Positions 26,369 through 46,639 of a DNA stretch of 64,000 bases are shown piece by piece. The DNA is taken from NCBI RefSeq assembly GCF_037042905.1, contig NC_087257.1, positions 20,274,001 to 20,338,000 of the forward strand, given 5' to 3'. Every line of letters begins with the position of its first letter. The first letter of the stretch is position 1. The stretch comes from Lytechinus pictus. Taxonomy: Eukaryota. The notes beneath the pieces are model-generated. The model did not search any database, had not been told where the DNA came from, and was given only the letters and a program-made list of their open reading frames with translations. Both the position numbers and the translations under genes were made by a program.

Positions 26369-26414
26369 AAACTCGACGTTTCGACAAGTGTGTTTTTGTC
26401 GTCTTCAGGAGATT
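26369..26414 (-). ncRNA. Minimal type I hammerhead ribozyme motif (Penelope-like element type)
   Basis: Minus strand reads AAUCUC-CUGAAGA-C-GACAA(AAACACAC)UUGUC-GAAA-CGUC/-GAGUUU: conserved core, 5-bp stem II, palindromic ACGU stem III, GUC cleavage triplet, short stem I. Confidence 0.65.
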
Positions 26415-27119: not shown

Positions 27120-27298
27120 TTAGCGTTCGATGGCGCAGATTTCGTATGGTTCTGGATTCATGGTGATTCCAGTCTCGCCACGCAAGCTTGGAGTGGGTTG
27201 ATTGAGTGGTAACCTGAATTCAAACTGCTGGAAGAGATTGGTGAACAGGAGGAAGGTTTCCATTTTAGCCAGCTGACTACCCACGCAATCCCGCCGAC
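27120..27298 (-). CDS. CYP2-clan P450 paralogue A, exon 4
   Basis: cag acceptor; completes the heme motif FGVGRRDCVG (FxxGxRxCxG); ends ...YEICAIER*. Confidence 0.95.
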
Positions 27299-27679
27299 CT
27301 GTATAACAACAGAAACATGAATTTCTTAGTTGACAATTAGCAAGCAGATTAGCATAAAGTAGTTTTAAGGTACCTCTGCTCATATAGACGCGCATACACG
27401 TATTTAAATCATGCAATTCCATTGAAGTTAATGTGCGAGTTTAATAGATACTTCCCTTAAACCCTTGGGAGGGGTGCCAACTTTAGCATGCTGCAAAGAC
27501 ATGGGCCCATTTTTTTTTAATAACGTACGATTAAGACTAGTTAAAAAGAATATCTAAAATTTTCCCAGTTCATCCAGAAATATGATAGTCTGGAGCATGC
27601 GTGAATTAAAATATAATGCTTGTATAAGACACTGTAAAAGGCCAATATTCTCTCTTTTATGAGGGGACAGAGCCTAGGG

Positions 27680-40999: not shown

Positions 41000-41615
41000 A
41001 TGGCGTAATAAGACAAACATTTTGAGGGGTGCAATATGGCGCATCGAGCAAAATTAATAAAAAGTTGCGAGCGAGCGAGCAAAAATTTCGACTTTTTTAT
41101 TACAAACATCTAACGTTGTTACTAGATTTTTACATTATATACAGTATATTATATGAATTTTCAGGGAAAAAATATATTTCACCCTTCTCTCTTTCCCCTT
41201 TTTTTTTTTTTTTTCTTGGTCGTGATTTTTTGTTTTGTACGCCACTGCTGGTATCACCATAATTACCATGGAAAGTAATGGTATATCTAAACGCACTTAC
41301 AAAGTTGAAATGGTTTTATCACCAACGGGAACTGTATCGTACTGAAACTATTGTGAAACCGTAGTTTCATAGTGTTAAAACTGAAGTGAAACCGTGGTAC
41401 TATACAGCACGATTTAAACGTCAAAAGTACATTATAACATGTCGTTTTACTATGTTTAAACCAATGAAAAACCATGGTATTTAGATGAATTTACAACAAA
41501 TAAATTCCACGAAACATTGTCAGAAGGCAAGACTCGGAGATGACTGAATTATGGAGACGAATCAGTGTTCCTGCTATTGTCTCTGAGACCTTTATCATTT
41601 TATTCTCTTACGCAG

Positions 41616-42229
41616 CTTCCATTGTGTGGAGTAATGGGAAATCTTGGTCTAACTTACGTAGATTCGCCCTTCCTGCCCTGCGCTCCTTTGGATTCGGGAA
41701 ACAAAGCATGGTACCCCAGATCAACCTTGAGGCACGATACCTTGCTGAGGAAATCAGGAATCTTCGAGGGGAACCCACGGACTTGGCATTCTTGCTCTGT
41801 AAGGCCACTGCGAATATCATTTGTCAGCTGTTGTTCAGTAGACGATATGAATACGGAGATGCAGCATTCAGGAAAGCGGTGGGCGCATTGGAAACGACTC
41901 TCTCCGCAATACCAGAGACCGACCCAGTCAACATCTTTCAAACACTCATAAATCTCCCCATCCCAAGATATAAAAGCTACCGTGAAGCCACGTTCATAGT
42001 TCGAGATTTCATCATGGGTAATCTAAAAAGTCACAGAGAAACCTTCCAGGCAGAAAATATCCGGGACTTCACCGACGTATACTTAAGTGACGACATCTCG
42101 AAGGAGTTCGAGTTTGATTGCTTCTGGAGAGCCATGCTTGATTTGTTTGGAGGTGGTACGGATACGACTGCGGTGGTTACCTCGTGGATAATTCTATACC
42201 TGGCGGTTCACCAAGACGTTCAAAGAAAG
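41616..42229 (+). CDS. CYP2-clan P450 paralogue B, exon 2
   Basis: cgcag acceptor; WSNLR, LRSFGFGK, GGTDTT, HQDVQRK|GTTTGC donor. Confidence 0.94.
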
Positions 42230-42853
42230 GTTTGCAAGTATTTATCACCATAAATAAATTGTATCTTTTCTATTATGCATACGTCCCAAAAATACAGAGA
42301 GGTAAAGAGGGTGATTCCATGCTTTTTTTTTCATTGTTATTTTCTGTTATGTTTGTGTCCCGTACGACACGCTACTATTTTTCATTTCAATTATGTTAAG
42401 TGCTGTTGTTGTTTTTTTATTCCCCTTCTCGTACTACTTGAGGATCATCTCCAATCAAGAAAATGTATACTTTCATGTCAAAAAGATGTAAAATTGTCAA
42501 AATGTCCTATATGACATAGCACGGAATCGCCATGGAATGATATGGGAAGATAAAACGTATGGTAGATATAGTGAGTGTCCTATATCATGTATATGACACA
42601 TTTTGTTTTCAATATGATTGTGAACACAATGCATAACGTGCAAGCATAGTAAGATGGTTGCATTAACCAGATTACATGTACAGCGGGGGGGGGGGTGATT
42701 TGCACTTTCATAAGATGCCGGATGATAACATTCCAACGATTAAATACCGGTAAAATGAATGACGAATCGAAACTTTCGTTTTCACCTATTCTTAAATCAA
42801 AATATCACGGAAATATTGACCCAGTACCTTCCGAATTTCCTTCATATATTCAG

Positions 42854-43181
42854 GTACAGGCTGAACTGGACGCGGTTGTTGGGCGTGGCCGTCAACCAAC
42901 TACCAAGGACCGTGAAGACCTGCCCTTCTGCGACGCTACTTTGCACGAAGTCATGCGGATTCGGCCAATTCTACCAATCTCGGTTCCCCACATGACTTCT
43001 GATGACGTTTCCTTGGGAGGTTATTCGATTCCTAAAGGATCCATCATTGTTCCGAACCTGTGGGCTGTTCATCATGATCCGCGGGAATGGAAGGATCCGG
43101 AAGAATTCAACCCAGGCCGATTTCTAAGCGAGGATGGGAAAGTATTTCAGAAGAATGATGCTTGGATGCCATTCAGTGTTG
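42854..43181 (+). CDS. CYP2-clan P450 paralogue B, exon 3
   Basis: ttcag acceptor; EVMR, FNPGRF, WMPFSV(G)|GTAAG donor; 328 bp as in A. Confidence 0.95.
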
Positions 43182-43777
43182 GTAAGATGATAATAGTTTG
43201 TCGCTCCACAACGCAAGCCGGATTCAAGAACATGCGAATATATTTATGTATTATACATTGCCGAATCATTTAATGAACAACCAAGTCTTTGTCGAAAGTT
43301 ACAGAATCAAAAGAGTAGTTTTCTCCCGGACTCTGGACAAACGGCATAGTTTGCCATTTTTCGTCACTCCGAAATTAAGGACGAAACTGCTGTACCGGGT
43401 TATCACTTTTCGACAAAGACCTTCCAGCTGTCTTTGTCATTTAACGGGTATTTTCAAGACCACGAAGTGCCCTACATCACAAAACATATTCACACACCCT
43501 TGTTATTTGACAATCGGGGACCCAATTATCATCGATCACCTAATTGGGGACGTGTGCTTGAATGTGGTCTCATACACTAATCTTGAGTTCATGATATGAG
43601 ATTCATTATCATTAGTCTGGTTGAAATAAAGCCAATAGTAATTGTCCACAAAACCAACAATTTCATGCTGAATGATAAATATCTTTCCACTGGATGAATA
43701 ATTGATGATAGTTTTTAAGCATCGTCATTTTTGTTATTTTTTTTTCTTTTTTGTGTCATTATTTCCATTTACTGCAG

Positions 43778-43956
43778 GTCGCCGTGATTGCGTGGGTAGT
43801 CAGCTGGCTAAAATGGAAAGCTTTCTCCTTTTCACCAATCTCTTCCAGCAGTTTGAATTCAGGCTTCCTTCTAACGATCCGACACCTAGCCTTCACGGTG
43901 ATATCGGGATCACTATGAACCCAATAGCTTACAGGATCTGTGCAGTAGAACGCTAA
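43778..43956 (+). CDS. CYP2-clan P450 paralogue B, exon 4
   Basis: tgcag acceptor; heme motif FSVGRRDCVG; ends ...YRICAVER*. Confidence 0.95.
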
Positions 43957-44392
43957 ATTAGTAGGCAAAGCTGTACCCAAAACAAGGCCATGTGAGCGAT
44001 TTTTATTTGGGGTGCTGGTTTGGAAGAAAACTTTTACCCAAAAAAAATGAAGAAAAAAAAACCCTGTTTTTACCAAAAATGGAGGTCGTTATGGGCAGGA
44101 AAAATGGACAAGCAACCCCCCCCCCCCTCCCCCCCCCAAAAAAAAAACACCCAGTTTCTCAGGATCATGATTTTTTTAAGTTTTCATTAGTACACGACGA
44201 ATTCTTTTGTGACAGTAAAGTTGACGATTGAACCATCTGTGCATGCGTCAACTTCGGTGCTTCTTCAATTCAATTCAATTTGTTTCAATTCAATTATTCG
44301 GCCCTGTAGCTTTTACAACTATTCGGATGTGAACCAGCTTCGCGCAGAAATTATAGAGTTTATTTGCGTTATATATATATATATATATATAT

Positions 44393-44623
44393 ACTCAACC
44401 CCCTCTGTTGTTATTTTTTGTTATCCTAGTGTAATCCTTCTGTTCTGTACCCTTTGTTACACATTATTTACTTTGTTGTTATTACGATTTTATTTGTATG
44501 GTTTTGTTCTATTTTGTTTGTTTCAATGCATTATAGGCCTGATGAAGGCCCCACTGGCCGAAAGCTCGCAATAAAAGAGATACTTGGAAGCTACGTCTAG
44601 CGTTAATGCTTGATTTATTTACG

Positions 44624-44625
<2 letters not shown>
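44393..44625 (+). mobile_element. Putative solo Penelope-like pLTR inserted in a (TA)n microsatellite
   Basis: ~230-bp T-rich segment carrying the hammerhead and poly(A) signal, flanked on both sides by (TA)n runs (~44370-44392 and ~44626-44654). Confidence 0.5.
44531..44575 (+). ncRNA. Minimal type I hammerhead ribozyme motif with overlapping AATAAA (Penelope-like pLTR type)
   Basis: UUAUAGGC-CUGAUGA-A-GGCC(CCACU)GGCC-GAAA-GCUC/-GCAAUAAA: conserved core, 4-bp stem II, palindromic AGCU stem III, CUC triplet; AATAAA at 44570-44575. Confidence 0.68.
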
Positions 44626-44660
<35 letters not shown>

Positions 44661-45210
44661 TCAATACGTCAACTTGAGTGCAAATGTGCAAATATATTAT
44701 GGATTTTTCGCTTCCACGACGCCCGACGGATTCAAGAACACAGAAAATATATTGTCAAATGCCCTTCATGTCAATGGACAACCAAGAAGCCTTTGTCGAA
44801 AATTGGTGAATCAAAACAGCATTGATTGTGGACAAACTACATACATGTAATAATTACGTCTGCTCCAGAATTTAGGAAGAAACTGCTGTGCCTATTCACC
44901 AATTTTCGAAAGAGACCTCACAGGTTTTTCCTTTCATTTGATGGGCATTTAAAATACATTTACATTGTTTTTTATCCGTCTTGCGTCGAAAATTCTCTAT
45001 TCGACACGATTTATAAGCAGGTCGGAAACACTACAGTACCAAGGACGTAGTTATCCATTCTTATGGTCACATCCGGCACTAAAAAAAAAAGCTCCTTGTT
45101 AGGAAAACAGAACTAACGAATAAAAAAACTTGTTATTCATTCACATCGTTGTGCGAAACTAGTTTCATCGTATCACAGTTATACTCCAACGAATTTGAAT
45201 ATAAATCTAA

Positions 45211-46639
45211 TACCCCTTTCATAAATCCAATTATGCGGCTAATAGCAGCATAATTTGGTCGTAAAATCGGAGGAGGACCAGAGTTATCCGCATTATTTTG
45301 ATGCTGCAATTATCCGCATAAAAGCATGGTGCGGTCACAAGGTCACCCTTTTCCAACACAACCGCATAGGAGGGGGCGTGTGCAGTTGTCATGACGATTA
45401 TCCGCCTTTTTCAGGACGGGCGCTCGTAAAAATAGTGCGGATTATTTTCGGAGTTTGTGAACGCAATTTTTATTGAATTATCCGCATTACTCTTAGGCGG
45501 CTAATTGGAGGATGGGTTTATGAAAGGCGGCTAATTGGAGGATGGGTTTATAAAAGGGTAATACCCCTTCATAAACCCATCCTCGAAATAGCATGCTGGC
45601 GACTTTTTTTTACAAATTTTCCCACATTGCTATGTTTTGCCCCTTAAAAATATTTGGTTCATTATGCAACCGGGTTGAATAAATGTGTTGTGTAAAAGTT
45701 CTATTCTGTATATGACCGCGATTTGATTAAAATAGCGGCAATCTGCGAGGTTTAAATGGCTTTGATATCAAGAAGTTTCGGGGGCTCCGCCCGGCCCCCA
45801 ACCACACAGCACTGCGTATGGAAGGGTTGGGTCATGGCCCCAAAAAGTTCTACAAACAAGAATTTAAAGAAAGGAGGAAAGAAAAGCAAAGGAAAAGTGT
45901 AGGATATGATTTTATTTACTGAATATAATGTCAAAAAATAGCTTAAAGTTAGATTCTCATGAAAAGGTGATTTTTTTCTCGATCGCTTCGCTCGCTCGGG
46001 ACTTATATAAAGCAGCTTTTTAGCACATGTGCTATACTGCTCCCCTGTTTTTTTTTCTTCTTTTTTTACTCTTCACGCTACTGCCACAAAGAATCCTGTT
46101 CACAGTGGCGTATCGTACAGACCACAAAAAAGGAATCTAAAGAGAGAAGAGTGAAATATATTGTTTTCTGGATATCATGTCAAAATCTATCACAAAATTG
46201 GATTTTTGTATTAAAAAGGTCAAAATTTTTGCTCGCTTGCAACTGTTTTTAAAGATAAATTCTGCCCGATACGCAATATCTGGCCTTCTCAAAATAGTCG
46301 CCTAATTACACCATTACGCCTGTTCATACCATGATATGACCGGGAAATTTTTGGCTCTTAACCCCCCCCCCCCTGGCCACCGACCCCTGTTACGCCGCTG
46401 GGCAACCGCACACACACCCTCCGATGCGGTTGTGTTGGAAAAGGGTGACCTTGTGACCGCACCATGGCAATTATCAACATTACTTTGAAATGCGTTCATA
46501 AAGTCAAAATCTGGTCCCGATGCCGCTATTATGCGGATAATTGCAGCGTCAAAATAATGCGGATAACTCTGGTCCTCCTCCGATTTTACGACCAAATTAT
46601 GCTGCTATTAGCCGCAACATTGGGATTATGAAAGGGGTA
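45211..46639. mobile_element. Inverted dimer of Harbinger-like MITEs with an outer TAA TSD
   Basis: TAA|TACCCCTTTCATAA...TTATGAAAGGGGTA|TAA; internal junction AAAAGGGTA-A-TACCCCTTC at 45552-45570; second copy interrupted by other repeats. Confidence 0.7.

What the first reader, a model, noticed from the sequence alone, without database searches (positions are those of the whole stretch)
44531..44575. Hammerhead ribozyme overlapping the first canonical poly(A) signal of CYP-B
Seen: a hammerhead core in sense orientation ~580 nt after the CYP-B stop (CUGAUGA 44539-45, GGCC/GGCC stem II, GAAA, predicted cut after CUC at 44567). AATAAA starts 3 nt later, and I find no other AATAAA/ATTAAA between it and the stop (only an AGTAAA variant at ~44214). 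Known: minimal hammerheads with a palindromic stem III occur in Penelope-like element pLTRs and generally need to dimerise; a 3'UTR hammerhead is known in rodent Clec2 mRNAs. Inference: a pLTR inserted into (TA)n may supply both the poly(A) signal and a cut that severs the mRNA from it, giving an expression-dependent self-limiting switch.
Basis: partly seen in the sequence, partly recalled or inferred. Interest (0 to 1): 0.8.

Follow-up and report, generated by a model that had tools for sequence, protein, structure and literature searches.

The report
Jumping-gene ribozyme tail ending a P450 mRNA
The hammerhead motif is real, but it is the standard minimal ribozyme in the tail of a very young Penelope-like retrotransposon that landed in the 3' UTR of a cytochrome P450 gene, where it probably supplies the mRNA's end signal and is unlikely to act as a regulatory switch.

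Summary
CUGAUGA (44539-45), helix II GGCC/GGCC, GAAA, the AGCU palindrome, the predicted cut after C44567 and AATAAA at 44570 are all as described. AATAAA 44570 is the first canonical hexamer after the CYP-B stop at 43954-56.

The motif sits in a 232-bp block (44394/6-44625/7) between two (TA)n runs. This block is the 5'-truncated 3' tail of a recently active Penelope-like element (PLE). The genome holds at least 48 copies at 95-100% identity. Longer copies have a GIY-YIG endonuclease ORF upstream, form head-to-head inverted pairs, show the PLE tail extension and insert into (TA)n.

The motif meets every published criterion of the dimer-dependent PLE "min-HHR". The genome holds about 1,500 such motifs against 23 for a reversed control, and helices I and II covary between families. 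Rfam models do not detect it.

The adjacency of ribozyme and poly(A) signal belongs to the element, not to the gene. Sister families keep AATAAA or ATTAAA 2-6 nt after the cut.

One RNA assembly shows CYP-B mRNA running through the (TA)n into the tail, at least to 44527, with no signal beyond the element. The true 3' end could not be mapped.

The "self-limiting switch" is unsupported and unlikely. This scan has already found PLE min-HHRs elsewhere in this genome.

The parts
43778..43956 (+). Coding part of the last exon of CYP-B (heme-binding FSVGRRDCVG; stop TAA at 43954-56). The preceding intron is 43182-43777.
   Evidence: ORF list. Pfam p450 hit, E 4.5e-11. A spliced X1 contig joins 43151-43181 to 43777/8.
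43957..44369 (+). Unique part of the CYP-B 3' UTR. It has no canonical poly(A) hexamer, only AGTAAA at 44214.
   Evidence: Hexamer scan. X1 contigs cover 43834-44106 and 44155-44527.
44370..44393 (.). Left (TA)12 microsatellite, one half of the insertion target.
   Evidence: Sequence. Other copies of the element also abut (TA)n.
44394..44625 (+). 5'-truncated 3' tail of a Penelope-like retroelement. Both boundaries are ambiguous by one TA unit.
   Evidence: At least 48 genomic matches at 95-100% identity, four of them 100%. Longer copies have a GIY-YIG ORF upstream, inverted pairs and the tail extension.
44531..44538 (+). Helix I, 5' strand. C38-G68 and G37-C69 pair; U31-U34 could pair with A71-A74.
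   Evidence: Sequence. Helix I covaries across families.
44539..44546 (+). Catalytic box CUGAUGA plus the unpaired A between A9 and G10.1.
   Evidence: Sequence. The extra nucleotide is a hallmark of PLE min-HHRs (PMC4209133).
44547..44559 (+). Helix II (GGCC/GGCC, 4 bp) with loop CCACU.
   Evidence: Sequence. Other families use at least 9 different helix II sequences.
44560..44567 (+). GAAA box, the AGCU palindrome (15.1-16.1, with no loop 3) and C17. The predicted scissile bond is 44567/44568.
   Evidence: Sequence. 97 of the 100 listed genomic motifs have a palindromic GC or CG here.
44568..44575 (+). Helix I 3' strand, overlapping the poly(A) hexamer AATAAA (44570-75).
   Evidence: Sister families have ATTAAA at the same place or AATAAA 6 nt after the cut.
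44576..44625 (+). Distal tail with the block GCTACGTCTAGCGTTAATGC (44590-44609), conserved between families, and a U-rich stretch. It is a possible cleavage site plus downstream element, or an RT recognition site.
   Evidence: Alignment of tails from three families.
44626..44655 (.). Right (TA)15 microsatellite, the other half of the target.
   Evidence: Sequence.

Best explanation
Shown: a Penelope-like retrotransposon (PLE) that targets (TA)n microsatellites inserted very recently, in sense orientation and 5'-truncated to its last ~232 nt, into a (TA)n run about 415 nt into the 3' UTR of the P450 gene CYP-B. Shown: like the tails of its relatives, this tail carries a minimal type-I hammerhead with no helix III of its own, so it can only form through an intermolecular AGCU duplex. 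A poly(A) hexamer follows 2 nt after the predicted cut. Shown in one RNA data set: CYP-B mRNA now reads through the (TA)n into the tail and is not detected beyond the element. Inferred: the mRNA is cleaved and polyadenylated at the element's own AATAAA plus U-rich signal, an ordinary case of a transposon-derived poly(A) site. Inferred: the hammerhead, present as a single copy in this transcript, is a passenger that cleaves rarely or never. Any rare cut at 44567 would remove the poly(A) tail and destabilise that molecule. There is no evidence that this amounts to regulation.
For: The repeat has at least 48 matches at 95-100% identity, four identical over 232 bp.
Longer copies are head-to-head inverted, 5'-truncated pairs with their outer ends in (TA)n.
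A 126-aa ORF about 870 bp upstream of the tail is a GIY-YIG domain with CxxC inside the core (29.3 bits against a cut-off of 22.6).
Copies end either at (TA)n or in a constant extension, and their 5' truncation points vary. These are published PLE traits (PMC8557442; PMC11167929).
The motif meets all four non-descriptor hallmarks of PLE min-HHRs (PMC4209133).
The genome holds 1,496 such motifs against 23 for the reversed control.
Helix I pairs over a mean of 2.69 bp against 1.50+-0.19 with shuffled partners, exceeded in 0 of 2000 shuffles.
Sister tails at 86% and 55% identity keep ATTAAA or AATAAA just after the cut, together with a conserved distal block.
In X1, a spliced contig proves the run is RNA. 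A 390-nt contig matches 44155-44527 with no mismatch or gap, at depth 36 against 48 on the exon. Depth is zero from 44568 to about 44725.
AATAAA 44570 is the only canonical hexamer between the stop and 45119.
Against: The true 3' end was not observed. The X1 contig stops at 44527, 43 nt before the hexamer, with no poly(A) letters.
Contig ends are not RNA ends. Position 44528 is G/T polymorphic among genomic copies, so the stop may be an assembly-graph branch with short tips clipped.
Three deep raw RNA runs, about 6% sampled, had no CYP-B reads at all, so start and end mapping was impossible.
No cleavage assay exists for this sequence.
Confidence: 0.75

Rival explanations
1. Two CYP-B mRNAs, or CYP-B mRNA and another PLE transcript, dimerise through the AGCU palindrome when abundant. 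The double hammerhead then cuts at 44567 upstream of the poly(A) signal or tail, giving concentration-dependent self-limitation of expression.
For: The geometry is right. The cut site lies between the stop codon and the only canonical hexamer, as in the Clec2 3' UTR hammerheads (PMC6765202). The mRNA does include the motif region, or at least reaches 4 nt before it. RNA coverage in X1 vanishes near the motif.
Against: Single min-HHRs show no cleavage in vitro, and dimers or trimers show only low activity (PMC4209133; PMC6765202).
In Anolis, no RNA-seq reads begin or end at the PLE hammerhead site (PMC11167929).
The double-hammerhead structure is -15.5 kcal/mol, against -30.9 for the dimer MFE and -23.8 for two monomers. 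A GGCCU/AGGCC hairpin buries the core.
The intermolecular contacts are only 4 bp for helix III and 2 bp for helix I.
No second motif of this family lies in the window on this strand.
The insertion is identical to four other copies, so it is too young to have been shaped by selection.
The module is generic to the element.
Confidence: 0.05
2. The motif is a chance match to a loose hammerhead descriptor in AT-rich UTR sequence and has nothing to do with ribozymes.
For: The loose pattern is expected 1.35 times per window by chance. No Rfam hammerhead family reports it even at E<=10.
Against: There is a 65-fold excess of the stricter design over its reversed control genome-wide.
The 15.2-16.2 positions are palindromic in 97 of 100 listed motifs.
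Helices I and II show compensatory changes between families.
The motif lies in the tail of a GIY-YIG retroelement, exactly where PLE hammerheads are known to lie (PMC4209133).
Confidence: 0.02
3. The 232-bp block is the terminal inverted repeat of a TA-targeting DNA transposon or MITE, not a retroelement tail.
For: Copies often occur as inverted pairs 0.2-5.7 kb apart with their outer ends in TA repeats.
Against: The interior encodes a GIY-YIG endonuclease of the PLE type, not a transposase.
The arms are 5'-truncated at variable points.
One arm often carries a constant extension beyond the other, which is the PLE tail signature (PMC8557442, PMC11167929).
Solo tails like this one are common.
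Inverted 5'-truncated partners are a documented PLE arrangement.
Confidence: 0.03
4. The CYP-B mRNA 3' end lies inside the element but is made by something other than AATAAA 44570. Candidates are termination or processing in the (TA)n run, or a non-canonical site near 44530-44560.
For: The X1 contig stops at 44527 and nothing covers 44528-44617. Four other runs of the same study hold only 0.2 of the sampled words of 44468-44617.
Against: No poly(A) letters are attached at 44527. No hexamer variant lies in the 60 nt before it. Contig ends are unreliable, and a G/T branch sits at 44528.
Confidence: 0.15

Closest known systems
Minimal hammerhead ribozymes (min-HHR) of Penelope-like elements (Cervera & de la Pena 2014, PMC4209133; Lunse, Weinberg & Breaker 2017, known here only as a citation in PMC6765202)
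   Same: It is a type-I hammerhead with CUGANGA and GAAA boxes, an unpaired nucleotide between A9 and G10.1, and a G10.1-C11.1 pair. The 15.2-16.2 positions are palindromic with no loop 3. It sits in the terminal region of a GIY-YIG retroelement. There are many solo copies from truncated elements and pairs on opposite strands.
   Different: Nothing essential differs. This is a particular young family in this genome. A poly(A) hexamer forms part of the 3' strand of helix I, a detail I did not find described in the papers read.
Discontinuous hammerhead in rodent Clec2 3' UTRs (Martick et al. 2008, as summarised in PMC6765202)
   Same: It is a sense-strand hammerhead whose cut site lies between the stop codon and the poly(A) signal, so a cut would remove the tail.
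   Different: The Clec2 ribozyme has all three helices in one transcript, is conserved among species, and was shown to cleave and to lower expression. The motif here lacks helix III in cis, is a days-old (in evolutionary terms) transposon insertion, and is untested.
Transposon-derived polyadenylation sites in host genes (general knowledge, not checked in a paper here)
   Same: A TE inserted in a 3' UTR brings its own AATAAA and downstream element, and the host mRNA ends inside it.
   Different: The donor is a PLE tail, not an LTR, LINE or SINE, and the signal is immediately preceded by a ribozyme motif.
Animal non-LTR retrozymes (Cervera & de la Pena 2020, PMC7229834; bioRxiv 10.64898/2026.07.22.740005)
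   Same: They are PLE-related sequences that carry type-I hammerheads working as dimers.
   Different: Retrozymes are tandem arrays that yield circular RNAs. This is a single 5'-truncated tail of an autonomous-type element, and its relatives have variable truncation points.

Membership tests
PLE minimal hammerhead (min-HHR) | Conserved boxes C3-U-G-A-N-G-A9 and G12-A-A-A15.1, with a U16.1-H17 cleavage dinucleotide | tested here: met
   CTGATGA 44539-45, GAAA 44560-63, U44566-C44567
PLE minimal hammerhead (min-HHR) | One unpaired nucleotide between A9 and G10.1 | tested here: met
   A44546. Criterion from PMC4209133.
PLE minimal hammerhead (min-HHR) | G10.1-C11.1 pair closing a helix II of at least 4 bp | tested here: met
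   G44547-C44559 plus 3 more pairs
PLE minimal hammerhead (min-HHR) | Palindromic 15.2-16.2 with no or minimal loop 3, giving dimer-only helix III | tested here: met
   AGCU at 44563-66. 97 of the 100 listed genomic motifs are palindromic at these positions.
PLE minimal hammerhead (min-HHR) | Consensus families within one genome that show compensatory changes in the helices | tested here: met
   At least 9 different helix II sequences and 16 helix I combinations. Helix I pairs over 2.69 bp against 1.50+-0.19 for shuffled partners.
PLE minimal hammerhead (min-HHR) | Located in the terminal repeat or tail of a Penelope-like element | tested here: met
   GIY-YIG ORF upstream in longer copies, with inverted pairs
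PLE minimal hammerhead (min-HHR) | Self-cleavage as a dimer | not testable with these tools
   Energy models only: the active dimer is -15.5 kcal/mol against an MFE of -30.9
Rfam hammerhead families (RF00163, RF00008, RF02275-7) | Covariance-model score at or above the gathering threshold | tested here: not met
   No hammerhead hit at gathering score over the whole window, nor at E<=10 on 421 nt. This is expected for a motif that lacks helix III.
Endonuclease-positive Penelope-like element | [quoted passage not shown] | tested here: met
   L031 5885-6262: PF01541 at 29.3 bits; IIY-LITCKKCHKQ-YVG. Signature from PMC8557442.
Endonuclease-positive Penelope-like element | Telomerase-like reverse transcriptase upstream of the endonuclease | not tested
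   All fetched copies are 5'-truncated. No further genome letters could be drawn.
Endonuclease-positive Penelope-like element | Inverted 5'-truncated partner copies, an optional 30-40 bp tail extension, and microsatellite targets | tested here: met
   compared with PMC8557442 and PMC11167929
Regulatory 3' UTR hammerhead (Clec2 type) | Cut site between the stop codon and the poly(A) signal, on the sense strand | tested here: met
   Stop at 43956, cut at 44567, AATAAA at 44570
Regulatory 3' UTR hammerhead (Clec2 type) | All three helices available within one transcript | tested here: not met
   No helix III in cis, and no second copy of the motif on this strand in the window
Regulatory 3' UTR hammerhead (Clec2 type) | Conservation at the locus, and a measured effect on expression | not testable with these tools
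   The copy is identical to four other copies, which argues for a very recent insertion. No orthologue or expression test was available.
Transposon-derived poly(A) site | Host transcripts end inside the element, downstream of its hexamer | tested here: inconclusive
   The X1 contig enters the tail as far as 44527, and there is no depth from 44568 to about 44725. No poly(A) junction was seen.

The most novel reading that the evidence does not exclude
In this genome, several PLE lineages place a host-type 3'-end signal immediately after the hammerhead cut site. The AGCU families carry AAUAAA or AUUAAA. An ACGU family carries a histone-like stem-loop plus a CAAGAAAGA box. In the family studied here the poly(A) hexamer is part of the 3' strand of helix I. 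Ribozyme folding and recognition by the 3'-end machinery could therefore be mutually exclusive fates of one RNA. One fate would be a processed mRNA for translation. The other would be an unprocessed or ribozyme-cut RNA that serves as retrotransposition template. Any host gene that ends in such a tail, like CYP-B, would inherit that choice.
Probability: 0.12. Interest if true: 0.6.

Novelty: new member of a known kind. Interest (0 to 1): 0.25.

Why it matters
The result turns an apparently exotic "ribozyme switch in a P450 mRNA" into a well-understood object: a fresh Penelope-like-element tail in a 3' UTR. Two points remain of modest value. First, it is a concrete and very young case in which a PLE tail appears to have taken over 3'-end formation of a host gene. 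Presence/absence alleles could show what such an insertion does to expression. Second, these PLE families carry a 3'-end processing signal right after the hammerhead. That arrangement may bear on the still unknown role of PLE ribozymes.

Tried and rejected
1. Rfam scans found no hammerhead family, either over the whole window at gathering score or over 421 nt at E<=10. The models do not fit motifs that lack helix III, so I used a descriptor with a reversed control instead.

2. The inverted pairs first suggested a TA-targeting DNA transposon with long TIRs. I rejected this after finding the GIY-YIG ORF, the variable 5' truncations and the tail extension.

3. An older, decayed PLE tail just upstream (44150-44371) could have offered a cis partner for dimerisation. 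The alignment score of 38 is no better than shuffles at 36+-6, so I rejected it. Only an 11-nt resemblance next to the TA run remains.

4. The CYP-A paralogue cannot serve as an "empty site". Only 89 nt of the coding exon align, and the 3' UTRs are unrelated.

5. Raw RNA-seq runs X21-X23 gave zero reads on the CYP-B last exon and UTR at about 6% sampling. RNA ends therefore could not be mapped.

6. A second run search over 44468-44617 aimed to see whether X1-X3 hold words past 44527. Those runs were not listed because of the four-per-study cap. Four other runs of the same study hold 0.2 of the words. This was inconclusive.

I did not try any other route.

8. The paper by Lunse et al. (PMC5785218) is not held. 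I used it only as cited in PMC6765202.

Full report
OBSERVATION

- CTGATGA lies at 44539-45, followed by one unpaired A at 44546.
- Helix II is GGCC (44547-50) paired with GGCC (44556-59), with loop CCACT.
- GAAA lies at 44560-63. A63-G64-C65-U66 form the palindrome AGCU, with no loop 3.
- C44567 is the residue before the predicted scissile bond.
- AATAAA lies at 44570-75.

The gene context also holds. ORFs at 41540-42253, 42695-43273 and 43702-43956 are P450 exons (Pfam PF00067; E 2e-37, 1e-41 and 4.5e-11). The last exon carries the heme loop FSVGRRDCVG and the stop TAA at 43954-56.

A hexamer scan finds no AATAAA or ATTAAA between the stop and 44570. Only AGTAAA occurs, at 44214, and the next AATAAA is at 45119.

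As a naked pattern the motif is not significant: there is one hit in the window against 1.35 expected. No Rfam hammerhead model reports it, even at E<=10 on a 421-nt search.

WHAT THE BLOCK IS

The motif sits in a block bounded by (TA)12 at 44370-93 and (TA)15 at 44626-55. Searching the window's own genome (812 Mb) with 44396-44627 gave 48 scored matches out of 237 candidates at 95-100% identity. Four of them are identical over all 232 bp.

Many copies form inverted pairs, with a minus copy on the left and a plus copy on the right, 0.2-5.7 kb apart. In the longest pair fetched (L031) the arms are mirror images of about 1.6 kb whose outer ends lie in (TA)n. About 870 bp inside each end lies a 126-aa ORF containing IIY-LITCKKCHKQ-YVG...RESYW...N. 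Pfam calls it a GIY-YIG domain at 29.3 bits against a cut-off of 22.6. [quoted passage not shown]

Copies end either at ...ACGCC(TA)n or continue into a constant extension beginning TACGTAGAACATGACG. Their 5' ends are truncated at different points.

Four features are published as the standard anatomy of PLEs (PMC8557442; PMC11167929):
- inverted 5'-truncated partners;
- an optional tail extension;
- microsatellite (TA)n targets;
- a hammerhead near the 3' end.

My first idea, a TA-targeting DNA transposon with long TIRs, is therefore rejected. The reverse transcriptase of this family was not seen.

IS THE HAMMERHEAD REAL?

Cervera and de la Pena (PMC4209133) defined the PLE "min-HHR". They listed features, not imposed by their descriptor, that argue against chance:
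- consensus families with compensatory changes;
- a conserved G10.1-C11.1 pair;
- palindromic 15.2-16.2 positions.

The motif here meets the three structural criteria directly (A44546; G44547-C44559; AGCU).

For the family criterion I searched the genome with CTGANGANG-N8-24-CGAAASSTH. This gave 1,496 hits against 23 for the same pattern read backwards. Of the 100 hits listed, 97 have the palindromic GC or CG at 15.2-16.2, although the pattern equally allowed GG and CC.

Across 26 distinct motifs with flanks, helix II uses at least 9 different sequences, and 19 of the 26 have 4 bp or more. The nucleotides flanking the motif pair as helix I over a mean of 2.69 contiguous bp. With shuffled partners the mean is 1.50+-0.19, and 0 of 2000 shuffles reach the observed value.

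This is a genuine member of the PLE min-HHR class. The failure of the Rfam models reflects the missing helix III.

THE RIBOZYME/POLY(A) ADJACENCY BELONGS TO THE ELEMENT

A sister family (L052), whose tail is 86% identical, has ATTAAA at exactly the place of AATAAA. A third family (L045/L060) is only about 55% identical and unalignable upstream of the ribozyme. It has a different helix I (UAC/GUA), a different loop II and a different residue 17. It still has AATAAA 6 nt after the cut and shares the distal block GCTACGTCT-AGC-T-AATGC before ending in (TA)n.

It is not specific to CYP-B.

The second hammerhead in the window lies at 26414-26369 on the minus strand, downstream of CYP-A. It belongs to another PLE family. 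It is followed directly by a GGTCCT/AGGACC hairpin and a CAAGAAAGA box. In a sister copy that hairpin is the only Rfam hit, to the histone 3' stem-loop at 15.8 bits, below the gathering score of 34. An earlier follow-up in this scan (s1-294504) noted the same histone-like signal elsewhere in this genome.

IS IT IN THE mRNA, AND WHERE DOES THE mRNA END?

Only one read-laying run was allowed. Three raw, rRNA-depleted RNA runs of the same species, about 6% sampled, had no reads on the CYP-B last exon or UTR. Start and end mapping was therefore impossible.

Run X1 (Logan contigs) is RNA. One contig joins 43151-43181 to 43777/8, which defines the GT-AG intron 43182-43777, and the intron has no depth. 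A 390-nt contig at depth 36 matches 44155-44527 with no mismatch and no gap. It therefore carries the unique UTR across the (TA)12 and 132 nt into the PLE tail. For comparison, the depth on 43834-44106 is 48.

There is no depth from 44528 to about 44725, including the unique sequence beyond the right (TA)n. So the insertion allele is transcribed as part of the CYP-B 3' UTR, and the mRNA is not detected past the element.

The contig end at 44527 lies 4 nt before helix I and 40 nt before the cut. It must not be read as an RNA end. Position 44528 is G in 29 and T in 2 of 31 genomic copies. An assembly-graph branch followed by clipping of short dead-end tips would give exactly this picture (my inference).

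A second run search over 44468-44617 did not list X1-X3 because of the four-per-study cap. Four other runs of that study hold 0.2 of the words. This is inconclusive.

The best reading is that the mRNA ends inside the tail, most simply at the element's own AATAAA, with a U-rich stretch at 44600-44620. An end produced by the ribozyme or at a non-canonical site cannot be excluded from these data.

DOES THE RIBOZYME ACT AS A SWITCH?

Six points argue against it.
1. The transcript holds one motif. No other copy of this family, and no other CTGATGA-type motif, lies on this strand in the window.
2. Single min-HHRs showed no cleavage in vitro, and dimers and trimers showed low activity, mostly at non-physiological Mg2+ (PMC4209133; PMC6765202).
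3. For an Anolis PLE whose hammerhead is active in vitro, no RNA-seq reads begin or end at the cut site (PMC11167929).
4. In nearest-neighbour energies the double hammerhead is -15.5 kcal/mol. It has intermolecular helices III (4 bp) and I (2 bp). The dimer MFE is -30.9 and two monomers total -23.8. The favoured folds use a GGCCU/AGGCC hairpin that buries the CUGAUGA box. Tertiary contacts are not modelled.
5. The copy is identical to four others and differs by about 1-2% from most. It is too young to have been shaped as a regulator and may well be polymorphic.
6. The module is generic to the element.

A rare cut would indeed separate the message from its tail, as in Clec2 (PMC6765202). I put a physiologically relevant effect at about 5-10% and an evolved switch lower still.

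COMPARISON AND NOVELTY

The object is a new copy, and a new family for this genome, of a known kind: the PLE min-HHR. The host-gene consequence is the familiar one of a transposon-derived poly(A) site.

It differs from Clec2-type 3' UTR ribozymes in lacking a complete ribozyme in cis, lacking conservation, and lacking any activity data.

One detail may be new; I did not find it in the papers read. In several PLE lineages of this genome a 3'-end processing signal directly follows the cut site, either poly(A) or histone-like. In this family the hexamer overlaps the 3' strand of helix I. That suggests, but does not show, a competition between ribozyme folding and 3'-end processing.

VERDICT

The element identity and the (TA)n target are supported. 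The poly(A) donation is plausible. The switch is not supported. Interest is low to moderate.

Noticed in passing
window 26369-26414 (minus strand), continuing to about 26310: A second PLE min-HHR lies downstream of CYP-A. It belongs to a different family (CTGAAGA-C-GACAA...TTGTC-GAAACGTC, with an ACGU palindrome), the same family as loci L051/L062. It is followed at once by a GGTCCT/AGGACC hairpin and a CAAGAAAGA box that resemble a histone mRNA 3'-end signal. In L051 the hairpin gives the only Rfam hit, Histone3 at 15.8 bits, below the gathering score of 34.
   Followed up: partly
L052 1416-1679 (-), L045 1416-1683 (-), L060 1351-1618 (+): Sister PLE tail families keep a poly(A) hexamer (ATTAAA or AATAAA) 2-6 nt after the hammerhead cut. 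They also keep a conserved distal block, GCTACGTCT-AGC-T-AATGC, before ending in (TA)n, although the sequence upstream of the ribozyme is unalignable in L045/L060.
   Followed up: partly
L031 2622-4700 (+): A 692-aa LINE-type reverse transcriptase ORF (FEKAFDS...RGVRQGDPLSPYLF...YADDMTIF) is nested inside the left arm of the inverted PLE pair. It is a separate non-LTR element.
   Followed up: no
loci L004-L030, the 40 nt after the PLE tail: About half of the copies do not stop at ...ACGCC(TA)n. They continue into a constant extension beginning TACGTAGAACATGACGCGCTGCAATACACG. In inverted pairs usually only one arm has it, which matches the published PLE tail signature.
   Followed up: partly
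window 44359-44369 versus 44614-44625: The 11 nt just before the left (TA)n (TTTATTTGCGT) resemble the last 12 nt of the PLE tail (TTTATTTACGCC). A wider alignment of the upstream UTR to the tail is not better than shuffles, so this may be chance or a target preference.
   Followed up: partly
window 44784-44837 and 45206-45250: Short segments have high RNA depth in all runs, with unrelated loose ends on both sides. These are probably pieces of expressed repeats, not part of the CYP-B transcript. 45210-45300 also matches 46640-46550 in inverted orientation at 96%.
   Followed up: no
window 43775-43863 versus 27213-27301: Only the first 89 nt of the last coding exon are shared (94%) between CYP-B and the inverted paralogue CYP-A. 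Similarity stops abruptly at 43863, where an X1 contig also diverges.
   Followed up: no
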